Source: Salpingoeca rosetta
Lineage: Eukaryota; Protista; Choanoflagellata
Length of the DNA stretch: 64,000 nucleotides
Assembly: GCA_033442325.1 (NCBI GenBank)
Contig: JAWQFM010000002.1
Span: 2,252,602-2,316,601 of the forward strand
Direction of reading: 5' to 3'
Below, piece after piece: positions 1,019 to 33,591 of this stretch (its first letter is position 1; every line of letters begins with the position of its first letter). Made by a program: the position numbers and the translations under genes. Below the pieces are notes generated by a model that was not told where the DNA came from, did no database searches, and worked only from the letters and a program-made list of their open reading frames with translations.

Positions 1019-1095
<77 letters not shown>

Positions 1096-2069: not shown

Positions 2070-2164
<95 letters not shown>

Positions 2165-3501: not shown

Positions 3502-3741
3502 GAAGCAGTGAGGCCTGCCTCCCACGGGGTATTAGTCTTTGCATCATCCGTGTGGTGTTAGGGTAGTAGGGTGTTTGAATTTACTCTACCCGGCACGCCC
3601 ACGCGGCCCAGACATGATTAACGGGCATTGAGACTTGTGACTTGAATGTACATACGTTTGCATAGCGCTTGGCACCTTGCCCTTATTCGCCGCCGCTTTG
3701 TTCATACATACTTCACCAACCAAGCTACATGTGCTGTGCGG

Positions 3742-5464: not shown

Positions 5465-8416
<2,952 letters not shown>

Positions 8417-8527
8417 CGATTCGTTGCTTCTGGGAGGTGTTGTCAGCGTCGTTTATGATTGGAGTAAGCCCCTGCCCTCTTTCGTGTTTTGCCCCCCCCC
8501 CCCTCAACACACACACACACACACGTG

Positions 8528-10218
8528 TCACTGGCCCCACGTCTCTGCTGTCTCCAGGTACTTTGCTTCCTCCGCCGTTGTCTCACGGCCCAGGGCCTTG
8601 TTCCGATGCGGATATCGTCCAAACTGCTCCAGCACCTGCACAGTGTGTGTGTGTGTGTGTGTGTGTTGGGGGATGAGAGGCTTAACAACACCTCGTTCAT
8701 CTCCTTCAAACGAATGCATAAGCACCACGCACGCACGCATGCCTGCAAGCAAACACAGCCACAAGCAGCCACAAACGTGCACGCATACCTTTGTGTGGGA
8801 TTGAAGATAGCCGTATGCTGCGTCAATAAGCTTCACGGCCCCCTGGCCTTCGTCGCCATAGCTTTCTGCCTCCTCCTTCATCTGCTGCAGCTCAGCTGCC
8901 ATGCGCTCGTGGTGGGCGAGGTCCTCGCTGTGCTCCAGAGGCATCAGCGCAAACATGCGCTCAACAGGCCGCAGCTCACGCATCCGCCCATCATCTGTGC
9001 AACAGCACAACCACGGAGAGTGTCGGTGAACGACAGTGGGTGAGGGGTGAGAGAGAGTGTGTGTGTGTGTGTGCGTGTGTGTGTGTGATTAACAAAGTGA
9101 AGAAGAGGCAAGGAAGGAAGAAGGAAGACGAAGGGCAGAGCATATGTAGCACATGTGTATCATGGTGGGGGAAGGGGGGGGTTCTGTGCTCTGTTGAAAG
9201 CAAACGCACGTGAACACACACACTCTCTCACTCTCTCTCTCACACATACACACACAGAGCACACTCTCTCACTCTCACTCCCTCTCTCACTCTCTCTCAC
9301 ACAGAGCACACTCTCTCACTCTCACTCCCTCCCTCACTCACTCACTCACACTCACACGCACCAAGGAGTTGTAGCGTCGTGTTCAGAGCCAAGCTGTCGT
9401 AGGAAAAGCACTTTGCGGAACCGCGAAAGATGTTGCGGGTAAACTGGTCGGTGAGCAGGATGAGGGCAAGTGACGCGCGCGGGTTCTCGCACGCAACCCA
9501 GCTGTCATATGCCTTGTTGTCGTCGTCCAGCTTGGCCAGATCCCCAGCAAATTCAGACCGGATTTGCTGCATCGCACAGAGCACATGTGATACGTGCCAA
9601 TGTGTTGTGTACAGCATGAATTGTGGGTGCGAATGTATTTTTTGTGAGCGTGTGAGTAACGGTCAAAGCACCCATCCGCTTCGATGCATCAAACAAGCAC
9701 ACACGCACGGACACACACACGCACGGACACGCACACACACACGCACCACACGCACCACACACACACACACTAACATACACACACCTGCACACACACACGC
9801 ACCACAGACGCTGGTGACACAGCTGTGGACCAACCTCGTCCACTTCTTTGCCGCCAGCAAACCACAGCTTCATTTGGTGCGGAAGAGAAGCAAGGTACGC
9901 TGTCCTGGCCACGACCTCCTATTAAGCAGTGACAACAATGGCGTTGAGCACTGGGACACGTGGTTGGACTTGAACACGATGAGGCGCAAGGCACCACAAG
10001 CCACAAGCTGTGATGAAAAGAAGAAGATCACACTTCATCTTGCACAACCAACCAAGCAACGAGCACGAACGTCACGCCATGCTCAATCAGAGTCTCACCG
10101 TGGTCGACGGTGACGCTGGCCAGTGTGGGTCCTGCCCAAACCAGAAGGTGAGGATGGCGCTTGCTCGCGCAGGTAGTGCTTGTCCAGCAGCCGTCGCTCG
10201 TGCGAGGAACGATGCCAT
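8528..10218 (-). CDS. DUF924 family protein, multi-exon
   Basis: Motifs ILTFWFG, LWFAGGKEVDEQIRSEF, LALILLTDQFTRNIFRGS, ERMFALMPLEHSED and FGRYPHRNKALGRETTAEE. Confidence 0.85.
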
Positions 10219-16799: not shown

Positions 16800-16999
16800 C
16801 TTGCTTGCTTGCTTGCTTGCTGCTTGCTGCTTGGGTCGTCCTTCTTTCTCTGTCAGAGTGCACGACACACAAAAAAAAACACACAAGAAGCAAGCACACC
16901 ACAACAACAACAAGACGGGCACTCCTTTGTGCATCGAATCAAATTTTTGTTGGCCCACGAACAGCCGCCAAAAGAAGAGAAAAGGGACAGACAAGCACG

Positions 17000-17037
<38 letters not shown>

Positions 17038-17618
17038 AGAGAAAGAGAGACAAGCAGACAGAGACGACAGGGGAAGAGACAAGAGGCAGCGTGAAGGGCA
17101 CGATCAGGTGCAGTCGGCGAGGGTGACAGTCGGCAAATCCAGAGTCCAAGTAGAAACGAAGAAACGAGGAACCAATGTGCATGCGTGGTGTGTCTGTGAG
17201 TAAGTGTGGGTGCAAGCATGTGCATGTGCATGTGCATGTGCATGTGCATGTGCATGTGTGTGTGATCATTGGAGTGAGAGGAGTTGGTGTTGTTGCAAGG
17301 TAGCAAGGTGCTTACCTTCCTCGCCGAGGCGAGGATGGCTCGTTGGTTGGGACGCCAAAAATGGCACCATACCAACTCACCAAAACAAAAAAAGGAGGGG
17401 AAAAAAGTGAGTGTCAGCCGTCCACTTCCGGGACTGACTGGTACCTAAGAGAGAGAAAAAAAAGTGTGAGGGTGTGGGGGGCTTAGTACATGTGCATGTG
17501 ACCGAATGTACATGTGTGTGGTGGTGGGGGGGGTTGTGTGCGTGTGTCTTACCTTAATCAGTGCTGAAAGCACTTTTGGGAGGCCCGCGATGTGTTGCCA
17601 CCACCACCACAGCGGTGG

Positions 17619-17718
17619 NNNNNNNNNNNNNNNNNNNNNNNNNNNNNNNNNNNNNNNNNNNNNNNNNNNNNNNNNNNNNNNNNNNNNNNNNNNNNNNNNN
17701 NNNNNNNNNNNNNNNNNN
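17619..17718. other. Assembly gap (100 N)
   Basis: Run of n characters. Confidence 1.
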
Positions 17719-17792
17719 GTGTATGTGTGTGTGTCTGCGGTGGTGTTGGTGTTGGTGGTGAGGGAGAAAAAAAAAACAAACTCTTTTCTTCG

Positions 17793-17865
<73 letters not shown>

Positions 17866-18399
17866 ACAAACAAACAAAACACACACACACACACTGGCTG
17901 GCTGCTGGGGTTTTCTCAGCAAAGTTTCTTCCCCCATTTAACCAATCACCTGCGACAAGACAGAAGACACGCCCATCTGTCGAAAGTTTGCCAATTACAA
18001 AGCGGCAAGCGGGAGCGGCATTGACAGATTATCGTCAACGCGCCATTCACAGCCACGCCCCCTTTACCAACATTTTACCACCTGTCTTTCGGTTGGAGGT
18101 ACGCCACTGCCTTTGCACAAAAGCCAAAGCTCGAGCTGTCGAGCTTTGTCAGGTATTGTTGTGGTGTCCCATTCTAGCATTCTGAGCTTTCTGTGCATTG
18201 TGTGTCAAATCATGTCACATCAACACGTTGCCTTTCATCTTTACTCAAGGACCTAAGGACACAAGGCACATGCAGAACCACAGTGCAGCAGCAGTAGCGG
18301 TAAGTTTAACACACGCCTACACAACAACACAGGCAACCAGGGTGCACTGAACGGCCCGCCAACTGCAGCGCGCACTCGCACAACGCACAACGCAGCGGA

Positions 18400-20541
18400 C
18401 GGCCACAAGAACCCATGACAACAGCGTACACCGCATCGTTCCCGGCGAGCGGCAGCCACTCAAACAGGCAGGCCGTCGCGTTGACGCGCACATGCACCTC
18501 ATTTAGCGCTGTCACCGGTGCAGCCGGCAGCGTCGTCACCAGCGCAGGTGCACTGAACGGTCCGGCCACGGCACTCGTCACACCGTGCACGCTCACGTTG
18601 TACGGCGTGGCCGGGCGAAGGTCACTGCTCGTGTATTCCCTGGCGTTGGTGTTGGTGTTGGTGGTGTTGATATTGCGGGTGTTAGTGTTTGTGTTGCTGG
18701 TGGTGTTAGGGTGTGGTGCCATTGGTGGTGAGTGTGATGATGCGGTTGAGGGGCCGGCGGCCAGGGGTTTCCATGCGCGTCTCCACGATTTGCGCATCAT
18801 ACGCCACGATGCGGCCGTTGGCGGGGGTCGGGACGCTGATGTTCACCCGCACAGCGCGCTGCCGCACCTCCAGCACCAGCGGAGCGGCGGGTCTGCTCGG
18901 CACATCCTCCGCAGTCACAACACCTGCTGTTGTAAACCCGCTCACCCCGCGACCGTGCACAGCGCGCACACGCACGTCGTAGGCGGTGAACGGAAGCAGG
19001 CCCGTGATTGTGGCGTGCAGCGGTGTTGCCAACTCGTCCATACTCGCGGGCTCGTGATCAAGATAGCGACTGCACATGGGGGAGGGGTGCGTGGGTGTGA
19101 TTTTGGGGGAAGGGAGGCGTGTGAGGCCAATAGTAGAGAGAGAGAGAGAGCAAAGATGAAGGAGGCGTACTGTGTGCATGGATCAGGTTTGGTGTGGATG
19201 TGTGCAGCAGAAATGACGCACAGTGGAAGTGCACACATGATCGTTGAGATTCGAATCGGATATGAACGTGCTCTGACACACACACACACACACACACACA
19301 CATGCGTATATACATACACACATACACACACAACACACACTCAAACTCACACTCCCCTTCACCACACACACACACACTGAGCCTCTTGTCACATACTCGC
19401 CACTGGTTGTGCGGGAGCGGTGTGCGCGTGTCACCAGGAGGGAACGAGGTATTGGTGCAGGTGACGGGGAGCCACGCGTCCGTGGTGTTGTGAAGGCGAA
19501 CATCGAGCGTGTAGTAGTCGATGGGAGCAAAGTTGCCGTGGGGCCGCGTCCACGCAGCGGTGGCACTTGTCGGTGCTGCCGATGTCACGTTGAGTGTGGA
19601 TGGCGCATCAGGATCAACTGCACGTCGCGGCATGTGTGTGTGTGTGTGTGTGTGTGTTGGGTGCGTGTGTGTGTGTGCGTGTGCGGGTGGGGTTACGTGT
19701 GAGTGTGTCAATGTGCGCACGTATCTGTGAAGGGATGTGTGACGCTGGTGCTCGCAAGGACAAACCCCATGAGTAAAGGCGTGTGCATGCGTAGTCTGTC
19801 TGAGCAAGCAAGTACACGTATCATGTCCTCATGCAGTGCGTGTGTGCGGGCGTGTACGTGTGTGTCGTGTGTCTCATGCGGGTAGGTGTGCCACACCTCG
19901 GGTGCAAATGGTGATTGGCCCCATTGTATCTGCGATGAGGTGACCAGCCACCCTCTGCGGGGCGGCGCATGCGACAAAGGGGAGGTCTTGTACAATGGAA
20001 ACCGCGTCCCGGAACCACTCCATGCCACAGCAGTACCACGGGTTGTCGCGCAAGTACCTGCAAGGTCGCAAGTAGCCAGCCGTCATCATGTCCACATGCG
20101 TGTGAGTATGTGAGTGGCTGACGAAGCAGACAACGTGGCAATGGCGGAGTGATCCAGGCACGCAAACTGTCGAGGTGCAACGTACAGTTGTGTGAGGTTG
20201 GCCCAGCGCGTGTCGTTGTTGTACACCAGCATCTCCAGCGTGTTGTTGTTCAGTCGCCTGTGTGTGTGTGTGTGGGGGGGGGTGTGTGAGAGTGTGTGTG
20301 AGAGGCTATGATATGAATGCAGATAGGATGAGCAAGGAAACTTGGTGCAAGGCTGCGTTTGTGGACGTGGATGTGGACGTCGGTGTTTAGGGGGTGTGCA
20401 CGCACGTGTGCCATGTGTGTGTGTGTTCAGTGAGGGGTGCTTTCGTTCTCGTCGTCTTCATGTGCACGTACAGGATGCTGAGTGGATTGTTGCCGATGAT
20501 GTCAATGGAAAACGATGCCAGCCGGTTGTCGGCCAGTCTCC
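18400..20541 (-). pseudogene. Fragment of an LRR + LRRCT + fibronectin type III cell-surface receptor gene
   Basis: Short LRR exons (LADNRLASFS, LNNNTLEML), LRRCT YLRDNPWYCC...VACAAPQRVAG, and FN3 motifs GLLPFTAYDVRVRAV and DLRPATPYNVSVHG. Frameshift/stop at about 18706. No start, TM or cytoplasmic part seen. Confidence 0.7.
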
Positions 20542-20629
20542 TGTCATTTGTCACGCAGGCGCACGTGTTGTGAAGATGAAGACACGTCAGCACATGCACA
20601 TGAGTAAGTTTGTAGCAGAAACGTACACA

Positions 20630-21540
20630 AAGCGAGTGTGCAGGGGTTAGGAAGGTGTGGGCAAGGAATGACGTCGTGCTGAAATACACGCGCATGTACA
20701 CACACGCATACATGCAGGGGCAAACACACACACACACACACACACATACACACGGGCGCGCGCACACACACCTTTGTTGTGCCATGCGCCACTTGGAAGA
20801 TTCCTGCCACGTAGCGCCCGCAAGCGTCTGACGTGACTGTCCGTTTGATGTTGCGGCAAGTATGCACGCCGTGCTGATTGACTGCAAACCGCTGGGATGC
20901 ATCGTGCTGGTACGGCAGAAGTGATGTGTCACCCAAGTGGGAGCGGGACGCTAGTGTTCATGTTCACGGCCCCGTTGCTGCACAGGACATGAATGGCGAA
21001 AGTGTCTGAAGCGTACACCTGCGAGCATGGAAGAGGAAAGAAGAAAAGGGGGGGGGGGTGAAGGACGAAGAAGGTTGAGTAGGTGGAGCGAGAGAGTAAA
21101 TGAGAGTGTGTGTTGTGCTGTGCTGTGTAGTGTAGTGTAGTGTAGTGTAGTGTAGTGTAGTGTAGTGTTGTGTTGTGTTGTGCGCGCGAGAGAGAGAGAG
21201 AGAGTGTGTGTGTGTGTGTCTGTGTGTGCGCGCGTGTGTGTTTTCTTCTTGCTTGCATGCAAGCACGCGCACTGATACGAGGAGTGCATGCAGACGCACG
21301 CAGTGAGTATAGATACAGACACCAATGCAAACATTGTGGGGTCAGTGGCAATGAAAGAGGCAGAAAACGGAGAGAGAGACTCGTGCACACGCTTGCACAC
21401 ACACACACACACGTACACAGACGTGTAGAGGCTCACGCTCACACGAACAAGCACAAACACACACGCGCGCCTGCATGCATGTGCCTCACTAACCAGGACG
21501 TGTCGTGAAATTCGTCACTGGCTGGGCAACTCAATACGGT
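20630..21540 (-). mobile_element. MuDR/MULE transposase remnant (N-terminal DNA-binding region), inverted homologue of 44680-46250
   Basis: Exon 21018-20772 (VYASDTFAIHVLCSN...RFAVNQHGVHTCRNIKRTVTS) matches 45629-45903, and the flanking intron sequence is also homologous. Frameshift near 20935. Boundaries approximate. Confidence 0.65.
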
Positions 21541-21772
21541 GCTCCGATGTTGGTCGCGAAATAGATGCAAGTCTCGCAGAAGTCAAAACGGTGCTGGACT
21601 CAATAATTTTACCAATCGCCAACAGCGGCAGCAGCTCATGCACTTGCCATGTTTGGCAATGACGCCATGTGAGTGTGGCAACGATCAGTTGGCAGGGTGC
21701 ACCATCACATTTCACGGTGAACAGTACACGCAACACGCATTCCAACACCAACACACTGTTCTGCAATCAACG

Positions 21773-22508
21773 ATGGGTGTACGTGGCTTCTGGTCTCTGT
21801 TTGCAGACAGCACGGTGAGTGTGCACCTCGCAGAATTCAGCGGAAGCAGGGTGGGGGTGGATGCAATGATATACCTGCACAAAGGGGTCGCGGTCGGACG
21901 CGGAATTACGGTCTGCACAGACCTTGTTGGGCGTTGTTCCAGGTTGAATATTGTGCCCGTCCTTGTCCTCGATGGTCAGGCACCGGTTATCAAGGCACCT
22001 GTACAAGCGAAGCGGCAAAGGGCAGCTTACCAACGAGGGATTGCCAGGCCGAGCCAGCACCAGTTAAAGGAATGGGCCGCCAAAAATGGAATCGGTGAGT
22101 CTGCTGGTGATACAAACTTGCCTTTGTTATGTTGGTGTTGTACAGCATTCGCACCGCACCAATCCTGTCGAAAACCTTCCCACACGTTTCACGACTCCGT
22201 CACTGACGCCACCACACCCCTACAAGCAAACGCACAGTACACCCCGCCCTAATGCAGTTCATGCACGCACCCATGTCTTGTGTACGTGCGGCGAAGAGGT
22301 GATACAGGCGCCCGGCGAAGCTGATGCCATGCTTGCCCACCTTCAACTTGAAGGCCAAATTGCAGCCATACTCACTGAGGATAGTGACCTGCTGGTGTAC
22401 GGCGCAAGGTGAGAACTGGGCGCACGCATGCACATGTAAACAATAACACACACACTCACTCATACACATACACAAGCAAACGCCCACGCATACATTCATA
22501 TCCACACG

Positions 22509-22542
<34 letters not shown>

Positions 22543-22643
22543 AGCAAACACCCACGCATACATTCATATCCACACAAACACACACACACACACACAAGCA
22601 AACACCCACGCATACATTCATATCCACACGAACACACACACAC

Positions 22644-22694
<51 letters not shown>

Positions 22695-25623
22695 AGCAAA
22701 CACCCACGCACACACATTCGACCACTCACCCGCGCACTCGCATACACACATACCCAGCAATGTGGTGTCACAAATAAAAGGCAATAGAGGAAGACGCCTC
22801 TCTGACGCCTTCGATGCTGCAAATTGCAGCAATACTGGCAGGCTGTGACTACACCAAAGGCAGGGACAACGTTGGCTTATTGACAATACTGGCAGGCTGT
22901 GACTACACCAAAGGCAGGGACAACGTTGGCTTATTGACAGCACTTCAAGAACCGTTGGCTCAAGCCAGAGCCCACGCCCACGCCCACGCCCACGCCCATG
23001 CCCACGCCCACGCCCATGCCCACGCCCACGCCCACGCCCACGCCCACGCCCACGCCCACGCCCACGCCCACACCTCCGTAGACGAACCCGAGGTAGACAA
23101 CAATTCCGAGGCCGACACCAGTCATCGCGCGCACCTTCGTACGTTTTCCTCCATCGGTCTCGGCGTACCACGCGCGAACGTAATCCAAATCTGCAGGTGC
23201 GTGAGTGTAAGCATAAGTGTGAGTGTGCTTGTGTGAAAATATGTGTGCATGTGTAATATGTGTGTATGTGCAACAGTGTGCGTGTCGATGTGATGTGCGA
23301 GAGTGTGAGAGAGAGACACGCACCAACTGCCACCTCACATGCACACGCGCGCATCTCTATATGACAGACCATTCAAAGCTTGTTCCACTCACCCTTGCCC
23401 GTTTGACGCACGCCTTGCAGATACGTGGGGGATATGCGCTGGGCGGTGACCGAAGCTATTCGGGATATGTACCTGAAGTGCGCGGAGGAGCACGACATAC
23501 TTGGTGAGTTACAGGAGCTCGCACAAACAACGAGGAAACGCTACGTTCAAGCCAAGATCGACTTTCGCAAGACAGGCAAGTGGGACAAGGAAGTCAAAAC
23601 GCCCACCGAGCCAGCTACGTTTTCAAGCAAGGTCGTTGAGCTGTCAGCCCACGGCATGGGCAGGGTGTGCACCCGCATGCGCCAGCATGCACGCAACAAG
23701 GAGGCTCGCCAACCTGACCCACAGGGAATCGAGCGTTTCTTCGGCGACCGAGTGCCAACACGGCCATCATTCATGTCTGCCACTGCGGTAAGCCATATTT
23801 GCACACTTGAAGTTGGCGATGTTCTAAACGTAAATGTACCTCGGTGTCTTGTGCGTATGTGTGTGTGTGTGTGCAAGTGGGTGAGAGTGAATGTGTGTGT
23901 GTGTGAATGAATGTGATGTGAACGGGCGTGAGTGTATGCGCTAAACGTGCATGTGTGTTTGTGCAACAGTGCGCATGTTGATGCAAGAGTGAGAGTGAGA
24001 GACATGCACCGACTGCTACCCCCGCTTCAGCTTACCAGCCACCACGCGCCACATGTTCTTTTGCTTGCAGGCTCACACTCTTCTCAATCTGCAGTTTCGC
24101 CTCATGGAGGGAAACTGCCGGCTGTACCTTCGAGTGGCGGCCCGAAAGGCAGCAGCGCGCAGTTCGCGAGCCGGTGGCGGATGTCTTGGTATTGATGATG
24201 CCCGGCTTGCTTGTGTGTCTCTGGCGGAACAGGCGCTGTTCGTCGCCGCTTTGACACACAAGCAAGGTGGTGACACTTCAGCAGTTTTCCCGCGCTTCGC
24301 TGCTCGGCACCCATTCATCACGATCGACAGTTGTGCATGTCATGCACTGAAGTGCCAAGCCAGCGTGCTGTCCAAGAACGTGCGCAGCATCCGCACAAAC
24401 GGACACATCGCATACCTGATCCAGAAGAAGGCACCTGCGACCTCCACCGCGACCTCCAGTTCCCGCAGCACTGGCACATCAAAGAAGGCGGGGAAGACTG
24501 AGGCAACTGATGTGAAGCCCGATGTGTGTCGAGTGGTGGGGTTGGACCCTGGTACACGTAAGCCGCTCGTCGCCGTAAGGCTGGGAGACGGAAAGAAGTA
24601 CACAGTTAGCCAGGCGCGACTAGTGTCTGAGTGCGGAGTGAAGGCTGGCAGAACTTCAGCTCGTGGTGCCACGTCGACAGATGGTGACGATGGTGACAAC
24701 GATGGTGACGATGACGAGGGTGACGACGTCAATTGTGATGATGATGATGATGGCGCCATCAAAGACAGTAAAGTAGGACACGGCCACCCTGAGGACAGGG
24801 GCGGTGATGATGCAAAAGGTGCTTGTGAGGACGCAAGCTCAGGGGACGACGGGCGCGGGCCTCCGGCTTTGTCCGGTCGGCGGCTGAAGCGCAAGCTTCA
24901 CACCCGGATGAAGGCAATCCGACCGTATCAGCAAAGAGCTTTGGCGGCGGCTGGGGCCAAGTCAGATTTTCTTTGGAGCCTGGTGCGTTTCATGCCCCGC
25001 TAGCTAGCGACATTGTTTGTCTGATGCCTGCGTGGTGGCGCTGTTCTAATGAAGGTTCTGTCGCGGCTTGTTTTGGTCAACGTGTGCAGTGTGCATCGTG
25101 GTCGGGGTGGTGGCGCAAAGTCCAGCACCCTTCGGCTCAGAAGGATGCTGGAAGCTCGCGCCCCTTTGCAGACAGTCGATGAGTTTCGAACCACGCGCTA
25201 CTCCCTGTGTTGCGCGTGGCCTCGCGACATTGACGCGTCCAGGCAGTCCCGGTGCAAGTCTTGCGGCGACACCCGCGATCGCGACGCGGCAGCAGCGGTC
25301 ACCATCGCGTGCAGGTAATTCTACGCTTCACACTCACTGTGCCTGCTCGCTTGTGGCTGCTTTGTTTGATTCTGACAGCTCGGTGTCTCGCTTTCCCTCT
25401 GGGACCATGCTGTAGAACCCTGACGGCGCAAGCGGGGGGGAACCTGGGCGTGTGGCAGCGGCGTACTTGCTCGCCGCAGATACCAGACCGCCACAATGCC
25501 TTGCGTCGCACGCATCGTCGTGTGCAGCGCATGTGGTCCGTCCGCATGCGAGCTGCCACCGTCGCCAACCGTCTTCTGAAGCTGAACTCCAGGCTAGGGA
25601 AGACCTCACCTCACCGGCAGTGA
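21773..25623 (+). pseudogene. XPG/EXO1-type 5' nuclease fused to a Fanzor (TnpB-like RuvC) nuclease; 7 exons, one frameshift
   Basis: Exons 21773-22094, 22297-22408, 22758-23196, 23421-23787, 24071-24982, 25055-25314 and 25416-25623 are all GT-AG and phase-compatible. XPG motifs: MGVRGFW, VGVDA, VLVLDG, IQAPGEADA, LTEDSDLLVYG, AILAGCDY. Fanzor motifs: SIRTNG, VVGLDPG, VDEFRTTRYSLCC, CKSCGDTRDRDAAAAVTI. Frameshift at about 22800. Confidence 0.85.
22830..22937 (+). repeat. Exact 54-bp tandem duplication (ILAGCDYTKGRDNVGLLT x2) in the H3TH motif
   Basis: caatactggcaggctgtgactacaccaaaggcagggacaacgttggcttattga occurs at 22830 and again at 22884. Confidence 0.95.
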
Positions 25624-25648
25624 CGCAGTCGTGTACCTTTCTTGCGTG

Positions 25649-25769
25649 TTAGCATTTGTTTGGGTATCACTGGCCCGCAATGCGATGTACTTGTTGGTGC
25701 GCGTGTTATGCATACACATTCCACAAGTCGTCACGAAGAGACAGATACATCGTGTACAAGCAAAGCTGG
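25649..25769 (+). ncRNA. Candidate Fanzor omega-RNA scaffold
   Basis: Nested complementary segments lie just after the Fanzor stop: 25651-25661 with 25758-25767, 25662-25665 with 25673-25676, 25680-25689 with 25746-25755, 25690-25697 with 25721-25727, and 25703-25706 with 25714-25717. The position matches the 3'/right-end location of TnpB and Fanzor guide RNAs. Confidence 0.55.
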
Positions 25770-28700
25770 GATGGTGGAGAGCCAAGCGCAAGCGCGATGC
25801 TCACGTCCAGGAACACGTCCTCATACACGGGCTGGCAGTTGTGGTCGCGGAGGCCGGCGAGCGGGCGCGTGGTTGGGCGTGACAGAGACGCTGTGGTCGT
25901 CGACGCAAGGGGAAACCACACACGCACATCCACGGATGCAGCAACGGCCGTGCCAGACACGCGCACCGTCACAGACACCCGTGATTGGCCCTCAATCTCC
26001 GTGCCCAGCAGCACCACGGCAGTGCAGTCCGCCGCAACACGCACAACGCTCTGCTTGCCACTCTCACATGCAAGTGCTGTGGTTGACGGCGACACGGGCG
26101 CGATGGTGCCTCGTGCTCCGCCGACCACAGAGCAAGCGCACTTGAAACAGTGTTGCCGTCCAGCCTTGCCGTGTTGATGAGCTCCGCTTGCGCCAAGTGC
26201 GGAAGAAGCGCAACAAGCGTGTTGGCTGCGACGGGGACATACCCAATGCTCTTGGAGGCGAGCACGCCGCGGTTGCGATGCAGGTGCAGTGCGGGGCTGG
26301 GCAGTGGGTAGAAGCCCTCCAGCTGCAGGTTGCGGCCCTGCAGGTCAACAAAGCCCACCACCGTTGCCTGAAGCTCAGAGAAGCGGCCCTCCACGGCCTG
26401 TGGCATCACTGCCATCTCAATCGTGCACAGCACCTCGGGGCTGGCGTAGCTGCTGCTGCCACCGCCACCCGACTGCTGCACCTGGCGCTGCAAGCTGATG
26501 GCGAGGGTGGTGTTGCCGCTCGTCGATGTGCGGGCGGACCAGCCAGGCGCCGCAACCACGCGCACGAAGCGAAGCGCGTCAGAGTCAATCATGTCCATGC
26601 GCAGCACAACAGCAGACACACCGCGGTCGGCTTGCGCATACACGGCCAGCTGTGTCGTATCCTCGCGATACACCGGTGCAAACGGCACCAGCACAGCCAC
26701 GGTGTTGCGCACCCTCGCTGTAATGGCGGGGCGTGACGCAAGCTGCAGCTGTCCTGGCAGCTCTTGCATGAACGCAGAGGCAGAAAGAGAAGCGCCAATG
26801 CCGTACGCGACCGTGACTGCGCGCATGGCAGCCGGTGTGCCGTCGCTGTTCTCAAGGGGGAACCATGACTGAGGCACACTCGTCCACGTAATGCAGCCTG
26901 AAGAAGCGGCGCTCATCTCACACCACGCCTGTACGCTCACGTCCTTCTTGGTGCCGTCACCATCAGTGTCCACACGTGCGCTCAGCGTGATGCTGACAGT
27001 GGTGGCAGCAGTGCGCATGTTGAAGCTGGCGTCGCGCGCTTGCAGGTGCACCCACACGTGCGGAGCGTCAAACCACACCGTGCTGGCAGACAGCAGCGTC
27101 GCCACCACGTCGTGCGCTGGCTGGCGAGGAACATCAACGTCCTCCTCCGCTTGCAAAGATGCCCACGCAGCGCTCAGCCGCGTCGTCACCGTGTCAGTGG
27201 TCGCACTGTCGGTGATGACCTCTGGGTTGGTGCCTGGCAGCAGCAGGTACGGCTGCGTGAAGGCGACAGAGGACACGCGAACGGGCTGCTGCTGGAACAG
27301 CGCTGAGTGCTCGACCTGCATCTGTGGCACGGGATACACGCTGGAGATGTTGCAGGTTGGGCCCTCAAACTCCACCGGGCACGCGCACATGTAGTGGCGC
27401 GCCTGCGCGTCCTGCACGCACGTGCCGCCGTTGGCGCAGAACGCATCCGAGCCCTCGTTGCAGTCGCACACGTCGCCGATGCCGTTGCTGTCGCTGTCGC
27501 GCTGCTGCGGGTTGAACACGCGCGGGCAGTTGTCCTTGTCGTCAAACACGCCATCGCCGTCTGTGTCTGCGCGCTCGGCGGGGCAGTCGTCACGAGCCAG
27601 CATCACGTCTGGGAACTCCTCGCTGTCGCTGTTCACTTCCAACGAAGCAATGTTCTCCAGCAGGAACGGGCCAATGAAACACAGGTTCGAGTTGTTGGCA
27701 ATCACCCACGAGCCACCGTACGACTGCAGGCTCGCCAGTGCACCCACGTCCAGCAAGACGGTGTTGTCGCGAACGAGGATGTCACCGTCCACGCGCGCAA
27801 GGTTGGAAGGTCCATCGAGCGTCATCAGGCGCAGGTTGTTGCGAACAATCACATCGCCTGCAATCTGCAGTACTGCAGCCAGGCCGTTGACGCGAAGCAG
27901 GAAGTCGTTGTTCTCCAACACAAATGATCCTTGCAGCCACATGGGCAGGTTCACTGCTTCCAGCGACACGAGACTCGAATGGCGAATAATCACGCTGCCG
28001 CACGTGCTGGGCTCCAGGCCCTGCAAGGTGGAAGGGCCAGCATCGGCCACCACCAGTTTGCCATCGATGGTGGTGAGCGCAGAGAGGCCGGACACGGTGC
28101 GCAGCTGTGCGTTGTTCTCAAGCACGAGGCCGCCAACCCATGTCAGGTTTGCAAGGCCACGCAGAGACACAAGATGGTCGTTGTTGCGCAGCGCAAGCAC
28201 GCCCGCGACACGCTGCAGGTTTGAGAGCGAAGCGAGGTGGGCGATGGTGGCGTTTGCTGTATCGTCACCCGTGGCGTTCGCAGGTGCAGCCGTAATGGAG
28301 ATGGTGACGTTGCTGTGGAAGACACGACACTCTGCAAGCAAGGCCAGGTCTTCGTATGTGGTCACGGTGGCAGTGGCGCCCGCTTGGTCGAGGAAGCAGT
28401 CGCGTGCAAATTCGCATCTGTCACCCGAGAACCCGGATGGGCATTGGCAATAGAAGCCAGCCACGCGGTCCTCACACAGACCACCGTTGAGGCAGGGCTC
28501 AGCCAGGCAGTCGTCAGCATCAATGCAGGACGCCGTGCTGGAGACCATGCCATTGTCCTGGCACACCTCCGTGAACGTGGTGGGCCCGTCCACGAGTCCG
28601 TTGGTCGTGTATCCTTGCAAGCAGGCCACGCCCACTTGCTCCATGAACGCGAGCTGCTGCGATGCGTCGTCGCCATCAACAAGGCTGCCGTTGACGACCA

Positions 28701-30750
28701 AGGCCGCGTTGGGCGGCGGCACAGCCGTGCACATCACGGGCTCGTCGCACACATCGCCACGGAAGCCGGTGCCTGTGCAGTTGCACGTGTACTCGTTAAT
28801 GCCGTCCACGCAAACGCCGGGGCCGCAGGGCTCCGCCTGCTGTGCGCACTCATCCACGTTGATCTCGCACCGCGCGCCATCGTACCCGGGTGGGCACATG
28901 CACTCAAACCCTTCACCTGGGACGTCGACACAGTCCCGCCGTTGAAGCAGCGCGTTGCGTCGCAGTCAACCTCGTTAATCACGCGCACTGTCAGCGTCTG
29001 CGTGAGTGTCAAGGGCGGGCTCACCGCGGTGTCCTCCACGCGGATGGTGATGTTGTGGGACCGCTGCGTCTCGTAGTCCAGCCGCCGTGACAGCACGAGC
29101 GAAGTACCAAACACGAAGAAGGGAGGATCGCCAGCAGAAAGCGCCACAAAGCGGTGGAAGCGCGCAGCGTCAGCATCCTCATCCTCAGCCCACACATGTG
29201 CAACTGTGCTCCCGACGGAAGCAAACTCGCTCACAGCGGTCGGGCTCAGCGCGATGCGCGTGGGCGGGTCGTTGGCGTTGGTGACGGTGAGAGTGAAGGT
29301 GGTCGTCGTCTCACGTTGCGGCACGCCGCTGTCCACACAGCGGATGGTCACAGAGGCCGTTTGCGCCTCCTCAAAGTTGAGCGGCTCAGCTCCCGCACGC
29401 AGGACAACCTCGCTTCCGTTGGCCATGGATGACGACGATGACGCTGAGGAGTCGATGGCAAACTGCGACTGCGGTGACACAACCTCACACGTTGCCGTCT
29501 GGTCGGCTTCGTCCGTCACAAGCACGCGTGCCAGCTGCTCGCCCTCTGGCGTGTTCTCCTGCACCGTGGTTGTGATCAGCGCCAGCGTTGGCGGCTCGTT
29601 CACGTCCTCCACCACCAGCGTGACGTTGGTCGTCGTTGTCGTCGTTCCGTCAGAGACGCCAAGCGTGTACGTGCGCTTGTTGTCGTTTGTGGACGCGACG
29701 AGACCCTCGTAGTCCTGTGCAGGCAGCGTGAACGTTGCGTTGCACGGCGTGAAGGGGGACGTGCGACCTGCGCAGGGCGTGATCTGCACCGCTGTTGCCT
29801 CTGGATCCTCCACCAGGAACAAGGTCAGGTCATCGCTCAGGTCCTCATCAACCACACCCACATCCACAGGTACGGGCTGGTTCTCGGGTGCTGTGATGAA
29901 CGCGTTGTCCTGCGCTGGTTCCGTAAACACGGGTGCATCGTTGGCGTCCGTGACGCGAATGGGGATGCGCGCCTCAGTCTCCAGTCCCGTTGCATCCACA
30001 GCAACCACGCCGAACCACTGCACACCGTCAGCGCCACCACTGCTTTCCTCAAAGTTGAGTGGCGCAACAAGCGTAACGTTGCCATCGCTGGTCACAGCCA
30101 GCACTGCCGGTACACCAGACCGGAACGTAACTGGACCAGACCCTTCAGGGTCAAGCGCGGAGAGTTGGCCGATCCGTGTCGTTGGCACCGTGTTCTCAAC
30201 GACGGTGGGCTGTGTCGGTGTGAGTGTGACGTCCACCGGGGGCTCGTTCACATCCTCCACGGTGATGTTGACCAGCTGCTGCACAAACTGACCAGCAGAG
30301 TCGATGGCCACCAGGTGAAGATGCAGCAAGGGCTCCGTCTCGTAGTCGAACAGCGTCGCCGCATCATCGCGCACGTACAGCAGATTCCCGCGCAGTTGCA
30401 GCCGCGTGTCCATGCCAACGCCGGCAATCGTGTGCGTGTCGTTGACATCTGGGTCTGCAACGACAAGCTCACCCAACAGCATGCCTGCCGCTGCATCCTC
30501 ACGCAGCTCGCCATCAAACGTGATGCCTGTTGGTGGCTCGTTCACATCGCCAATGCGCACCGTCACGCCCTGTGTGACGTTCAGCCGCTGCGGCGTGGTG
30601 TCTGTGCACGTCACCACCACCTCCACAGTTGGGCTCGTCTCAAAGTCAAGCACTCCGGCTGCATCACTGCGCAGCACAAGCTCGTTGTTGTCTGTCGTCA
30701 CGGAGAACAGTGCACTGCCAGTGGCCGAGGTGTCAGTTACTGCGCACGAG
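25770..30750 (-). pseudogene. Intronless fragment of a giant cadherin/EGF/receptor-L/TSP3-repeat surface protein, truncated at both ends
   Basis: About six cadherin repeats (LDFE, DVNEPP, DANDAP, LDYE), EGF repeats, receptor-L-like repeats (LSNLQRVAGVLALRNNDHLVSLRGL) and TSP3 [35 protein letters not shown]. Single-base frameshifts near 28934 and 26130. Confidence 0.8.
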
Positions 30751-30771
30751 TGCTGTTGTCCGGTGGTGTCT

Positions 30772-31833
30772 TCACACGCCGTCATCGTCCCCCTCCTCAC
30801 ACTCTTCGCCCTCTTCTCCATCTTCACCCTCATCCATCCGTTCGTCAACCCAATCAACCTCCTCATCGAGCACGACTGCGGCTGCCTTTTCAACGTCCAT
30901 CTCGTCAGTGCTATCAGCGCTCGCAGCTCGGGTGGTTGTACATGGTGCTGCTTGCTCTACTGCCTCCTCTTCGCCCCTGCCATCGATGATGCGCCGCTGC
31001 CGCTCCAGCTGCTTGTCGATCGAGTCAATAATGGCTTGCACGCGCGTCTTGCCATCTTTGCGGTACTGCCCGCGATCCTCGGCCAGGCGTTGGATTTCTT
31101 CCTCCAGACGCCTTCCAACATCCTCGAAGGTTGTATCGAGGCTGTATCTGCGGCCGACGTTGCCCTGATCAGCGCCCACACGAGCTCGATTGGGTTGAGG
31201 TCGCTGTAGCACGGAGGGGAGAAGAGCACCTTGTGGCCCTTGCGCCTCGGCCAGCTGCACCACCTCGGGTTGGACGTGGTTCTTCACCCACAACTTCAGG
31301 CGGTCTTTCAGCTCGCAGGAGAAGTCAGTCTCGCTCACGGTCAGGTTCCTGGCTCGCAGAGCTGCAATGACGTCCGCTTTCTTCATTCTCCCCGGGACTG
31401 ACGTGTCTGGTGGGAGGGTGCAGTGGTACGCTGCGTTGTCCATGATGATGAGCGACGGCTGGTGCAGGTTCGGCAGCAACGCATCCTTGAACCAGCTGAT
31501 GAAGTTGTCAGAATTAAAGGCTTTATGATAGTCCCCTGTATGGAAGCTCCCACGAGGGGGCTTCCGGGGACGGCCCTGCTGTTGCTGTGGTTGCTCAGGA
31601 AGGTCTTCGTCAGCGACGGGGCACTTCTTCCGCGTGTGCCCTGGCTGCTTGCATCGACCACACTTGCGTGTGGATGGTTGCTTCTGTGGTTGTTGAGGCA
31701 GGTCTTCTTCAGCGACGGGGCACTTCTTCCGCGTGTGCCCTGGCTGCTTGCACCGTGGTGGTGGTGGTGATGATGATGGCGGCGGTGGCGGTTGAAGTGA
31801 CGATGATGGTGGCGGAGGAGGAGGTGGTGGTGC

Positions 31834-31884
<51 letters not shown>

Positions 31885-31937
31885 GTTGAAGTGACGATGA
31901 TGGTGGCGGAGGAGGAGGTGGTGGTGCTTGCTGCTGC

Positions 31938-31982
<45 letters not shown>

Positions 31983-32327
31983 CGTTGTTGTCGCCGCTCA
32001 CGCTGCAGTGCGCTGCCAGGGTCGAAGATCCAGCTCGTGCCTGGAACAGGACCGGCGAGGGCGCGGTCGTTGCGGTCACTGACGGTGCACACGCGCGGAT
32101 CCGGGCCCTGAACTGCGAGGGCAAAGCAGTAGCGCCGACCCCGCTTGATCTTGCGATGACTGTGCATGTCTTGACCGTCGTTGGGGTCATACAGGGAGTC
32201 TCTGTTCCTGTTGTAGTTCCTGTCAATGTATGATTCATCGAGATACACCTACAGGCAATTGAGCCACGTGAGACACGAAAAGGGAACATTGCACATGCGA
32301 AGAAACATCGACAACACAGCAGCATGG

Positions 32328-32365
<38 letters not shown>

Positions 32366-33275
32366 CTCTGAGGCGCTCGTCAGGTGGCAACCTCCTGTTT
32401 GCATCAAACTCCTTCAGATACTTCGCCAGCAGCTGCTTGTGCCTCGGGTTCTCTTGAACAACGTGCTTGTTGCCGCGAAGGTAGCCCGCACGACGAAGAA
32501 ACCGCTGCACTGCCCGCAGAGCCGCCGCCCTGTCCAGTTCGTCGTCACCATCGCCAGCAAACGAAGGTCGTACGTCCACATGCCTGTGCTTGCGTAGGAA
32601 GTCAAGCACCTGTACGGCCGTGATGCGGTGTCCACCTTCTCTCTGCATGCGCACGTGATCGCGAACCTGCCTGAGCACACGTTTTGTCGTGGGCACACGT
32701 GTCGGCAGCTGTGTCGCCTTCCCACGGCGGTTCTCAACAGAAAGTGTCTTAAGGCCCTGCAGACACGAAGCACATGGAATATGAGCCAACATGAACAGAT
32801 CTAAGACAAACAGCACGCTGGTGTATGAGTTGACCACAGCAGGTACATCTCCTCAACTCACATCTATGCCGTGCTCTTGCAACAGCTTGTTGAGCATTGC
32901 ATACTTCCGACGCACAGTGCTGAGGCCAACCCTGTGTTGTTCCAGACCGAGGTAAAAGAGTGAAGTGAGGTCGGCCATGCGAATGAATCATGTCACAGTT
33001 GACACATGCAAACACGTCAGCTTGCACACTAACAAAAGAGTGTCAACATACCCCAACTGCTTAGCAGCACGTTCATCGACCTGGCCATTCGAGCGCTTGC
33101 CCTTGGACTTCCTCCGGTTCTCCAAGTGTGCCAATTTCAACTGCATGTACACATGCAAAACCAGAAGCGTTTCCTTCTCTGTCAGGGTTCCCTGACCCCT
33201 CATGTTCCTCAGGCACGCACATATCTCCACGATCTCCTGAGGAGTCACGTGCTTCTTGGTTACCGGCTTGGGCAT
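30772..33275 (-). mobile_element. IS630-Tc1-mariner transposase with long spacer (about DD83E, Sailor-like), spliced, degenerate
   Basis: VYLDESY, GDYHKAFNSDNFISWF, IIMDNAAYH and FSPPCYSDLNPIELVWA; 83 residues between the second D and E after correcting a frameshift. Three GT-AG introns in the N-terminal part. Frameshifts near 31238 and 31165 and in the repeat insert. No TIR identified. Confidence 0.82.
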
Positions 33276-33591
33276 GTCTTGTCGTGCCCGCTTTGGTGAG
33301 TTGGTGGCAGCTCGCCTTCATCGTCGTCGCTCACCACCTCGGAATCAGGCACAAACTCATCGTCGGTGATGGTGGTTGAAAATTTTTATTTTGCCGACGA
33401 TTTGCACGAAAGATGCAACTTGACAGCGGTCGCTTGGGGCGTGTGCGTCACCCTTGCACCCCAAACCAGCGCAGATGCATGTGCAAGGCCGACGTGGTGC
33501 TGCCGGTCAGCTTTCAAACGACTCAAATCCAACCACAAACGAGAAAAATAAAACCCTACCATTTCGTGTGTCGGGCACTGTCACGTCAGCA

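What the first reader, a model, noticed from the sequence alone, without database searches (positions are those of the whole stretch)
21773..25623. Natural fusion of an XPG/EXO1-family 5' nuclease with a Fanzor (eukaryotic TnpB/Cas12-like) RNA-guided nuclease
Seen: seven exons with phase-compatible GT-AG introns join into one reading path of about 870 aa, with a single frameshift near 22800. The N-terminal part has the full FEN1/EXO1 acidic set (VGVDA, VLDG, PGEADA, TEDSD, GCDY) and a short helical arch. The C-terminal part has RuvC-I D (GLDPG, codon 24545), RuvC-II E (VDEFRTT, 25181), a zinc finger (SLCC...CKSC) and RuvC-III D (RDRD, 25283), plus SIRTNG. Known: a catalytic E just before the zinc finger is the Fanzor-type RuvC arrangement, and Fanzors are omega-RNA-guided DNA endonucleases carried by transposons. 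Inference: one polypeptide could cut at an RNA-specified site and then resect 5' ends or cleave flaps, biasing repair towards homologous recombination (element homing) or deletion, like engineered Cas-exonuclease fusions. The ORF track splits this gene into six unrelated-looking ORFs, so it is easy to miss. I cannot verify from here whether this architecture has been described.
Basis: partly seen in the sequence, partly recalled or inferred. Interest (0 to 1): 0.96.

Follow-up and report, generated by a model that had tools for sequence, protein, structure and literature searches.

The report
Decayed EXO1-like nuclease–Fanzor fusion gene
This stretch of the choanoflagellate Salpingoeca rosetta is a broken copy of a transposon-borne gene that joins an EXO1-type DNA end-resection nuclease to a Fanzor (TnpB/Cas12-like) nuclease in one reading path, an architecture that also occurs elsewhere and that I could not find described in print.

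Summary

The fusion reading is supported by four lines of evidence:
- A paralogue family only 35–58% identical, on contigs C8 and C12, keeps the same order of parts.
- The exon before the junction and its intron phase are conserved between the two families.
- Public gene models PTSG_12556 and PTSG_03380 already cross the junction.
- An unrelated metagenomic protein family (P0016, 1139–1177 aa) has XPG_N–XPG_I–HTH–OrfB_IS605–TNB in one intronless ORF.

- The gene has six exons and ends at 25318, not 25623.
- This copy is a pseudogene with three lesions: 56 nt missing at 22800/22801, a 54-nt tandem duplication replacing unrelated sequence, and 8 nt missing after 24921. The sister copy on C7 lacks the first two lesions where it is readable.
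- Stranded RNA-seq shows only antisense, minus-strand-spliced RNA and none of the predicted sense junctions.

The gene is cargo of a 16.7-kb TIR-bounded transposon (window 16853–33584). RNA guidance and cut-then-resect are inferred, not shown. Other first readers of this scan flagged EXO1–Fanzor fusions on other pieces of this genome.

The parts
16853..33584 (.). Family-A DNA transposon (about 16.7 kb) that carries the gene. A second copy lies at G000:C7:1823270-1842349.
   Evidence: Homology between the two contigs starts and stops sharply here, with unrelated flanks. The termini are inverted, 16 of 18 identical at the same offset (score 14 against a maximum of 8 in 500 shuffles). The right end resembles the common right end of family B (TGAC...CGACAC).
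21773..22096 (+). Exon 1: XPG_N domain, holding the first two acidic sites (VGVDA, VLDG) and the start of a shortened helical arch.
   Evidence: Pfam XPG_N, E 1.2e-9. Best solved relative is human EXO1 3qea, E 5e-4. Identical in the C7 copy.
22299..22408 (+). Exon 2: first half of XPG_I (PGEADA, TEDSD).
   Evidence: Pfam XPG_I, E 5.7e-12. 50% identical to the paralogue's exon.
22758..23196 (+). Exon 3: rest of XPG_I with the H3TH motif (GCDY), an (AH)n microsatellite and the conserved pre-junction segment. It is broken in this copy.
   Evidence: The C7 copy and the RNA reads carry 56 extra nt between 22800 and 22801, which keep the frame. A 54-nt tandem duplication at 22831-22938 replaces unrelated C7 sequence. 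The exon's tail is homologous to the exon before the Fanzor part in family B.
23421..23787 (+). Exon 4: first Fanzor-family exon (LAQTTRK motif).
   Evidence: 44% identical over 50 aa to the paralogues on C1, C10 and C12. The acceptor phase is the same in both families.
24071..24982 (+). Exon 5: N-terminal Fanzor part and RuvC-I (GLDPGTR, D codon at 24545), with an acidic low-complexity insert. An 8-nt deletion after 24921 shifts the frame.
   Evidence: The only hit in 1.84 billion representatives is the paralogue PTSG_12014 (E 4e-7). DPG.R matches invariant columns of a 32-member Fanzor alignment. Run X1's contig has AGCTTACA after 24921, which restores the ...IFFGA frame shared with family B.
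25090..25318 (+). Exon 6: rearranged RuvC-II Glu (codon 25181), zinc ribbon (CC...CxxC), RuvC-III RD (D codon 25283) and stop at 25316-25318.
   Evidence: Pfam Cas12f1-like_TNB, 29.2 bits. A profile search of solved structures hits mimivirus Fanzor2 9b0l_P best (E 4e-4), with the Glu aligned to its E467; ISDra2 TnpB and Cas12f follow. 58% identical to family B.
21500..25900 (-). Spliced antisense RNA, the only transcript seen. Exons are <=21500-21642, 21875-22025, 22271-22388, 22754-22842, 23135-23190, 23393-23472, 23723-23857 and 24128->=25900.
   Evidence: Every listed joint with canonical ends reads CT..AC, and all listed joints are carried by first-mate-on-plus reads of three stranded runs. 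I checked the intron ends in the sequence. The spliced product has no ORF over 185 aa. Allele letters at 23165, 25117 and 25336 show that most reads come from the C7 copy.
30772..32837 (-). Putative transposase of the element, with CCHC knuckles and an ...IIMDNAAYH... segment.
   Evidence: Only a weak DDE_3 match (E 0.025, below the cut-off). Nearly the same ORF lies at the left of family B.
25969..30893 (-). Captured fragments of host adhesion genes (EGF, Recep_L, TSP_3, cadherin). Further fn3 fragments lie at about 18300-19800 on the minus strand.
   Evidence: Pfam results. These ORFs lie upstream of the antisense RNA, on the same strand.

Best explanation
Shown:
- Window 21773-25318 (+) is a degenerate copy of a six-exon gene in Salpingoeca rosetta.
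- Its intact reading is about 799 aa. An EXO1-like XPG/Rad2 5' nuclease domain (exons 1-3) is joined through a short linker to a very divergent Fanzor (eukaryotic TnpB-type RuvC nuclease, exons 4-6).
- The gene is cargo of a 16.7-kb TIR-bounded DNA transposon, alongside a putative DDE-type transposase and captured fragments of host adhesion genes.
- The window copy carries three disabling lesions. The nearly identical copy on contig C7 lacks the first two where it can be read.
- The same architecture is kept in a second family in this genome and, with another Fanzor clade, in an environmental intronless ORF.
- The only RNA seen here is a spliced, non-coding antisense transcript.

Inferred:
- In an intact copy the Fanzor part, loaded with a transposon-encoded guide RNA, would cut DNA at a guide- and TAM-specified site, as shown for other Fanzors and for TnpB.
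- The tethered EXO1-like domain would then load on the break and degrade the 5' strands, or trim 5' flaps.
- The resulting 3' tails would favour homologous recombination over end joining, so a transposon-bearing copy would be used as the repair template (retention or homing of the element).

My odds are about 0.8 that this is a true fusion architecture and about 0.35 that cut-then-resect is its mode of action.
For: Domains and catalytic residues. For the paralogue PTSG_03380, EXO1 is the best solved relative at 1e-34 over residues 1-313, against FEN1 at 3e-24.

Fanzor identity: TNB above the Pfam cut-off. The best solved-structure profile hit is mimivirus Fanzor2, with the Glu aligned to E467, which Jiang et al. 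mutated to give a catalytically dead enzyme (PMC10530073). Language-model neighbours are eukaryotic and giant-virus PF07282/DUF8286 clusters. hhalign gives probability 84%, E 7e-6, over the C-terminal 52 columns. The top 50 Foldseek hits are all Cas12f, Fanzor, TnpB or other Cas12 structures.

Fusion: colinear paralogues. Conserved junction segment and intron phase. Public models PTSG_12556 and PTSG_03380 cross the junction. Identity to family B is even across XPG (36%), linker, and Fanzor (39-58%). The single-ORF family P0016/P0126/P0133 occurs in two ENA samples and one GenBank metagenome contig.

Mobile element.

Lesions.
Against: - No sense-strand splice junction or appreciable sense coverage in three stranded RNA-seq runs; only antisense RNA.
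- The public gene models may be ab initio predictions.
- On C8 the models are split in two, and the C1 copy lacks the XPG part where it can be read.
- The C-terminal half of the C7 copy is masked, so its intactness is unproven.
- No omega-RNA was identified. The 3' region folds no better than shuffles (z -0.73) and shows no nucleotide similarity to family B.
- In family A the Fanzor lies 8 kb from either transposon end, unlike canonical TnpB/Fanzor loci.
- Only the C-terminal third of the Fanzor part is linked to known Fanzors by statistics. The fold model is weak (pLDDT 60) and was built on an alignment that included true Fanzors.
- The first zinc knuckle reads CC instead of CxxC.
- Family A's helical arch is about 25 residues shorter than EXO1's.
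Confidence: 0.65

Rival explanations
1. Two adjacent but separate genes. An EXO1-like nuclease gene and a Fanzor gene travel together as transposon cargo and are translated separately, with the Fanzor starting at the conserved Met of RY(V/A)G(D/Q)M.
For: A Met is conserved five residues into exon 4 in both families. On C8 the annotation has two models, PTSG_03380 and PTSG_12014. The C1 copy seems to hold only the Fanzor part. No sense transcript links the parts.
Against: The residues upstream of that Met, and the whole preceding exon segment, are conserved at protein level with the same intron phase. In family A that segment is in the same exon as GCDY. The split on C8 follows a frameshift within exon 4. 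PTSG_12556 and the intronless P0016 family are single ORFs.
Confidence: 0.15
2. A relic only. All Salpingoeca copies are dead, and the locus now matters, if at all, as the template of a non-coding antisense RNA or 3' UTR driven by the captured adhesion-gene fragments.
For: The window copy has three frameshifting lesions. The C8 copy is frameshifted. Sense coverage is a few per cent of antisense coverage in the two deeper runs. The antisense RNA is abundant and spliced.
Against: C2 and C7 are about 99.9% identical outside indels, so the element moved or converted very recently. The C7 copy reads through wherever it can be seen. The catalytic residues of both nucleases are kept in families only 35-58% identical. 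Three RNA samples do not cover all life stages.
Confidence: 0.3
3. A true fusion, but the XPG domain has another job: processing transposition intermediates of the carrier transposon, trimming the displaced non-target strand or flaps at the R-loop, or maturing the guide RNA, rather than long-range resection.
For: XPG-family enzymes are structure-specific flap and bubble nucleases (established knowledge). Family A's helical arch is shortened. Bao and Jurka report other nucleases (GIY-YIG, restriction-like) as co-cargo with Fanzor in Mariner elements (PMC3627910).
Against: The family-B domain matches the EXO1 catalytic domain over its whole length, ten orders of magnitude better than FEN1. Nothing in hand tells these roles apart.
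Confidence: 0.2
4. An artefact: chance ORFs, an assembly chimaera or contamination.
For: The region is rich in microsatellites, and the C2/C7 pair could be an assembly duplicate.
Against: Three Pfam domains pass their cut-offs. The arrangement occurs at four or more loci with different flanks. Public reads and contigs from several studies hold it.
Confidence: 0.02

Closest known systems
Fanzor (eukaryotic TnpB homologues; Bao & Jurka 2013 PMC3627910; Saito et al. 2023 PMC10432273; Jiang et al. 2023 PMC10530073)
   Same: It is transposon-borne in a eukaryote and has introns. It has RuvC-I DPG.R, a Glu next to [TS][TS] just before the zinc ribbon, and an RD motif. That Glu aligns with mimivirus Fanzor2 E467. 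It is carried as cargo of a TIR transposon together with other captured genes, as reported for Fanzor1 in Mariner-type elements.
   Different: It has an N-terminal EXO1-like nuclease domain, which those papers do not mention (no library paper holds both 'Fanzor' and 'XPG'). The sequence is so divergent that only its own paralogue is found among 1.84 billion representatives. Its first zinc knuckle is CC. No omega-RNA was found, and in family A the gene is far from the element ends. Bao and Jurka list only two Fanzor2 families for this species, probably the C14/C29 genes.
EXO1 (XPG/Rad2 family 5'->3' exonuclease / flap nuclease; human EXO1 catalytic domain, PDB 3qea)
   Same: It has XPG_N, XPG_I and the H3TH motif with all acidic metal ligands. 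The family-B domain aligns to EXO1 residues 1-304 at E 1e-34. A host EXO1-like gene on C20 is 39-63% identical per exon.
   Different: It lacks the EXO1 C-terminal tail that binds MSH2 and MLH1 and has a Fanzor in its place. Family A's helical arch, and the region after the H3TH motif, are shortened.
Metagenomic XPG-TnpB/Fanzor2-like proteins (P0016, P0126, P0128, P0132, P0133; 1139-1177 aa)
   Same: They have the same N-to-C order: XPG nuclease, a long linker with basic NLS-like stretches, then the RuvC nuclease, all in one ORF.
   Different: The Fanzor clade differs: HTH_OrfB_IS605 and OrfB_IS605 are recognisable, and the RuvC part is about 42% identical to the other Salpingoeca Fanzor on C14. 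The XPG part is only 23% identical to PTSG_03380. They have no introns, and the organism is unknown. The fusion therefore probably arose more than once, or is old.
Engineered Cas9/Cas12-exonuclease fusions
   Same: The concept is the same: a programmable nuclease tethered to a 5' exonuclease to change the repair outcome. This comparison rests on my own knowledge and was not checked here.
   Different: This one is natural, transposon-encoded, and untested.

Membership tests
XPG/Rad2 (FEN1/EXO1) 5' nucleases | XPG_N and XPG_I domains above Pfam's curated cut-offs | tested here: met
   39 bits against 22, and 46.3 bits against 24.9. For paralogue P0003: 61.4 and 73.3 bits.
XPG/Rad2 (FEN1/EXO1) 5' nucleases | Full set of acidic metal ligands (EXO1 D30, D78, E150, D152, D171, D173, D225) | tested here: met
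   VGVDA, VLDG, PGEADA, TEDSD and GCDY align with EXO1 and with family B.
XPG/Rad2 (FEN1/EXO1) 5' nucleases | Intact H3TH region and helical arch | tested here: inconclusive
   The H3TH exon is broken in the window copy (56 nt missing plus a duplication) but intact in C7. Family A's arch is about 25 residues shorter than in EXO1 and family B.
EXO1 subfamily | Closer to EXO1 than to FEN1, XPG or GEN1 | tested here: met
   P0003: EXO1 1e-34, FEN1 3e-24, XPG 4e-15, GEN1 2.5e-13. Window exon 1: EXO1 is best but weak, at 5e-4.
Fanzor / TnpB (OMEGA RuvC nucleases) | TNB (OrfB_Zn_ribbon, PF07282) domain | tested here: met
   29.2 bits against a cut-off of 26.3 for the window. The paralogues score 24.5-25.7 bits, just under it.
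Fanzor / TnpB (OMEGA RuvC nucleases) | Motif D-X(125,275)-[TS][TS]-X-X-[C4 zinc finger]-X(5,50)-RD (Bao & Jurka) | tested here: inconclusive
   D at codon 24545, TT after E 25181 (about 190 residues on) and RD at 25280-25285 are present and align with invariant columns of 32 Fanzors. However, four residues rather than two separate TT from the first Cys, and the first knuckle is CC, not CxxC.
Fanzor / TnpB (OMEGA RuvC nucleases) | Catalytic Glu in the rearranged position seen in Fanzors | tested here: met
   The Glu of (D/E)EFRTT aligns with E467 of 9b0l_P. The canonical position reads FFG(A/D).
Fanzor / TnpB (OMEGA RuvC nucleases) | RuvC/WED/REC fold | tested here: inconclusive
   The AF2 model built on alignment A6 has pLDDT 59.8. 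The top 50 Foldseek hits are all Cas12f, Fanzor, TnpB or other Cas12 structures (best E 5.7e-5), but TM-scores are 0.27 or less and the alignment included real Fanzors. The single-sequence model failed. hhalign covers only the last 52 columns.
Fanzor / TnpB (OMEGA RuvC nucleases) | Guide (omega/f) RNA encoded at the 3' end of the gene, next to a transposon end | tested here: inconclusive
   The fold of 25175-25770 is no better than shuffles. There is no similarity to family B's 3' region. Sense reads over 25175-25762 appear in one run only. In family A the gene is internal to the element.
Fanzor / TnpB (OMEGA RuvC nucleases) | Residence in a eukaryotic mobile element | tested here: met
   Family A is TIR-bounded with two copies. 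Four family-B copies share one right end with different flanks.
Fanzor / TnpB (OMEGA RuvC nucleases) | RNA-guided DNA cleavage | not testable with these tools
   This needs biochemistry.

The most novel reading that the evidence does not exclude
XPG/EXO1-Fanzor fusions form a recurrent, functional class of eukaryotic RNA-guided nucleases that carry their own end-resection module. After the guided cut they force repair by homologous recombination, which gives the transposon a homing or retention drive in cells where end joining would otherwise erase it. The intronless metagenomic member (P0016) and the Salpingoeca C7 and C12 genes would then be natural templates for compact editors that favour templated repair.
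Probability: 0.3. Interest if true: 0.9.

Novelty: new variant of a known kind. Interest (0 to 1): 0.78.

Why it matters
The biological role of Fanzors is an open question; Saito et al. state that it remains unknown. A Fanzor that has repeatedly acquired an EXO1-type resection nuclease points to what happens after the cut: repair is channelled into recombination, which parallels the homing role proposed for bacterial TnpB. This makes the idea directly testable with natural proteins, one of which has no introns. It would also be a natural counterpart of engineered nuclease-exonuclease fusions used to shift editing outcomes. The public Salpingoeca proteins hide the architecture: PTSG_12556 lacks the XPG N-terminus, the C8 copy is split into two models, and Pfam sees only a zinc knuckle and a near-threshold TNB domain.

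Tried and rejected
- **HMMER search of 1.84 billion representatives with 24071-25003.** It found only the paralogue P0001. A word-indexed search with P0001's C-terminus found only P0001 itself. The family therefore has no recognisable outside relatives by these routes.
- **Structure prediction.** AF2 on P0001 alone gave pLDDT 46 and was unusable. phmmer of P0001 and a profile of the N-terminal Fanzor part against solved structures gave only CCHC-knuckle noise.
- **My first gene model.** It used a 72-nt intron (24983-25054) and gave an 808-aa path with no stop. I rejected it because it reads an out-of-frame stretch. The 8-nt variant from run X1, with intron 24983-25089, restores the conserved FFGA-C-VHRGRGGG frame.
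It is not needed. The stop at 25316 matches the end of the paralogue.
- **Transposase assignment.** Only a sub-threshold DDE_3 hit (E 0.025), so the superfamily is left open. Apart from UTP20_N fragments, the family-B left-hand ORFs I tested gave no convincing Pfam match.
- **Omega-RNA.** Fold z-score is -0.73 and there is no conservation between families A and B.
- **IMG/VR scan with P0016.** No relatives found.
- **The look-up of encoding contigs for P0001.** Nothing on record.
- **Literature searches.** Fanzor or TnpB with XPG, Rad2, PIN domain, exonuclease, FEN1 or EXO1: no paper describes such a fusion.
- **Masked sequence.** The C7 copy's 3' half, parts of C1 and C10, and the XPG_I exon of C12 read N, so their state could not be judged.


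Full report
**Organism and locus.** The window is G000:C2:2252602-2316601 of a 55-Mb eukaryotic genome. A paralogue of the gene in question is the NCBI protein PTSG_12014 of Salpingoeca rosetta, so the organism is this choanoflagellate.

**The observation.**
- Pfam places XPG_N on 21773-22096 and Cas12f1-like_TNB on 25049-25318. XPG_I scores on the ORF 22086-22412, with the match inside exon 22299-22408. All three are above their curated cut-offs.
- The best solved relative of exon 1 is the human EXO1 catalytic domain.
- A two-sequence profile of the C-terminus hits mimivirus Fanzor2 (9b0l_P, E 4e-4) first, then ISDra2 TnpB, LaTranC and Cas12f. The Glu of VDEFRTT aligns with E467, the residue Jiang et al. 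mutated to inactivate that enzyme (PMC10530073).

**Copies in the genome.**
- A second copy of the whole neighbourhood (window 16853-33584) lies on contig C7, with sharp ends and unrelated flanks. The termini are inverted repeats, 16 of 18 identical. This is therefore a transposon of about 16.7 kb, not a plain segmental duplication.
- Besides the nuclease gene the element carries fn3, EGF/TSP3 and cadherin gene fragments on the minus strand and a putative transposase with CCHC knuckles. That transposase has only a sub-threshold DDE_3 match.
- Within 21396-24470 the C2 and C7 copies are almost identical except for indels. C7 has 56 extra nt between 22800 and 22801. It also has unrelated sequence where the window carries a 54-nt tandem duplication (22831-22938).
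- With the C7 version, exons 1 to 4 read through in frame.
- Run X1's contig has 8 further nt after 24921. With them, the end of exon 5 reads ...ELWRRLGPSQIFFGA and joins exon 6 (25090-) as FFGA-C-VHRGRGGG. This matches family B's FFGD-C-VHKGRGGG residue for residue.
- The window copy is therefore a pseudogene with three lesions. The intact reading is six exons and 799 codons, stopping at 25316-25318. I computed this reading only in scripts, as a test of frame.

**A second, divergent family.**
- Own-genome searches with Pfam XPG_N and with the Fanzor piece both hit C8 and C12, about 4 kb apart on the same strand.
- tblastn shows the same order of all six parts there, at 29-61% identity.
- Four family-B copies (C1, C8, C10, C12) share one right terminus (...GTCGCCCGCGGTCA) followed by unrelated flanks.
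- C8 and C12 are homologous over about 15 kb, including a transposase-like ORF almost identical to family A's and a UTP20 gene fragment.
- The C1 copy holds only the Fanzor part where it is readable.

**Is it one gene?**
- Cluster look-up of PTSG_12014 revealed PTSG_12556 (948 aa). Its model starts in the XPG H3TH region, passes three linker exons and runs to the Fanzor C-terminus. Where I checked, its exons are 100% identical to C12.
- PTSG_03380 (531 aa, on C8) has the complete XPG domain (EXO1 1e-34, FEN1 3e-24). It uses the same linker exons and runs on into the first Fanzor exon, where C8 is frameshifted.
- The exon preceding the junction is conserved between the families: A has LRTFSSIGLGIPRANVIQIC|RYVGDM and B has LMPFKRLGVELERSKVLEMC|RYAGQM. 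The intron phase is the same. In family A that segment lies in the same exon as GCDY.
- Identity between the families is even along the protein: 36% in XPG, 35-40% in the linker and N-terminal Fanzor part, and 58% in the C-terminus.

**Independent confirmation of the architecture.**
- I searched with the other Fanzor of this genome, a 761-aa ORF on C14 that is probably one of Bao and Jurka's two 'Sal' Fanzor2 families (PMC3627910).
- Among 120 listed relatives, this returned one cluster (P0016) with XPG_N (1-109), XPG_I (156-247), HTH_OrfB_IS605, OrfB_IS605 and TNB in a single 1139-aa ORF.
- Full-length members of 1139 and 1177 aa come from ENA metagenome contigs. The two whose contigs I fetched lie in different ENA samples, and a GenBank metagenome contig holds another.
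- Its XPG half is only 23% identical to PTSG_03380, and its Fanzor half belongs to another clade. The combination has therefore arisen more than once, or is old.

**Fanzor membership.**
- The family is extremely divergent: only its own paralogue is found among 1.84 billion representatives.
- Supporting evidence: the TNB hit; the solved-structure profile hits; language-model neighbours that are PF07282/DUF8286 clusters of eukaryotes and giant viruses; and hhalign over the last 52 columns (probability 84%, E 7e-6).
- The motifs DPG.R, E..T, CxxC and RD also fall on (nearly) invariant columns of a 36-row alignment.
- An AF2 model built on that alignment has Cas12f, Fanzor, TnpB or other Cas12 structures as all of its top 50 Foldseek matches.
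- That model is weak (pLDDT 60) and leans on true Fanzors in its alignment, so I rate the fold test as inconclusive. The N-terminal WED/REC part is unverified.

**Expression.**
- Three stranded RNA-seq runs of the species cover the region. Every listed splice joint with canonical ends reads CT..AC on the plus strand (one minor variant read CT..CC and one C7-form joint TA..AC), and the reads have the first mate on plus.
- The RNA is therefore minus-strand. It is spliced at 21643-21874, 22026-22270, 22389-22753, 22843-23134, 23191-23392, 23473-22722 corrected to 23473-23722, and 23858-24127, and it runs unspliced through the antisense of the Fanzor exons.
- It has no ORF above 185 aa. It lies downstream of the captured EGF/cadherin fragments on the same strand.
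- Allele letters at 23165, 25117 and 25336, and the 56-nt insert, show that most of these reads come from the C7 copy.
Sense coverage is a few per cent of antisense coverage in the two deeper runs.
- The exception is run X21, where about 4-7x of sense reads cover 25175-25615. This is a weak lead for a 3' sense RNA.

**Mechanism.**
- Shown: two nuclease domains with complete catalytic sets in one conserved reading path, on a mobile element.
- Inferred from what is known of Fanzor/TnpB and of EXO1: a guided cut followed by 5' resection or flap trimming, which biases repair towards recombination and so towards retention or homing of the element.
- Rivals: separate genes; a dead relic; or a different job for the XPG domain.

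**Novelty.** No paper in the searchable library holds Fanzor together with XPG, and none that mentions Fanzor with Rad2, PIN domain, FEN1 or EXO1 describes such a fusion. The three main Fanzor papers do not mention it. The scan's own first readers noted EXO1-Fanzor fusions on other pieces of this genome (s1-435876, s1-438621, s1-440257). These are unchecked notes and not independent evidence.

Noticed in passing
window 25175-25762 (+): In run X21 only, reads from plus-strand RNA reach 3.6-7x over the last Fanzor codons and about 300 nt beyond, then fade by about 25760. This equals or exceeds the antisense depth. In X19 and X20 the signal is at leakage level. It could be a guide-RNA-like sense transcript or noise.
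   Followed up: partly
window 24921/24922: Run X1's contig carries 8 extra nt (AGCTTACA) here. RNA depth drops sharply at this point, as expected if most reads (from C7) carry the insert and fail the 95% identity filter.
   Followed up: yes
L028 (G000:C14:434500-439499) 918-3203 +; L029 (C29) 2527-3732 -: A second, conventional Fanzor with a 761-aa single-exon ORF, a coiled-coil repeat N-terminus and TNB at 57 bits. It has hundreds of relatives carrying HTH_OrfB_IS605 and OrfB_IS605. These are probably the two 'Sal' Fanzor2 families of Bao and Jurka.
   Followed up: partly
L030, L031, L032 (metagenome contigs): An intronless XPG-Fanzor2-like ORF of 1139-1177 aa from an unknown organism (GC about 52%). 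It is followed on the opposite strand by a 342-355-aa ORF with a protease-like GMCGGPVV motif.
   Followed up: partly
window 18300-19800 (-), 25969-30893 (-); L020 2546-3446 (+): Both transposon families carry fragments of host genes. Family A has fn3, EGF/Recep_L/TSP_3 and cadherin. Family B has UTP20_N. This points to gene capture by a large TIR element.
   Followed up: partly
P0001 residues 120-141; window 30772-32361 (-): CCHC zinc knuckles occur both as an insert in the family-B Fanzor (absent from family A) and in the putative transposase.
   Followed up: no
L023 (G000:C20:305000-314999), about 6850-8530 (-): The probable host EXO1 gene, 39-63% identical per exon to the transposon-borne domain. 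It is a candidate source of the captured nuclease.
   Followed up: partly
G000:C1 about 3208500-3208650 (L017): The Fanzor-only family-B copy on C1 abuts a Ty1/copia-type reverse transcriptase fragment (...VYVDDLLIF...).
   Followed up: no
own-genome XPG_N hits C2:2452034-2452204 (-, one TAG), C27:79478-79756, C38:73-246, C9:247614-247787: Further XPG-like fragments, some with stop codons. I did not check whether a Fanzor lies next to them.
   Followed up: no
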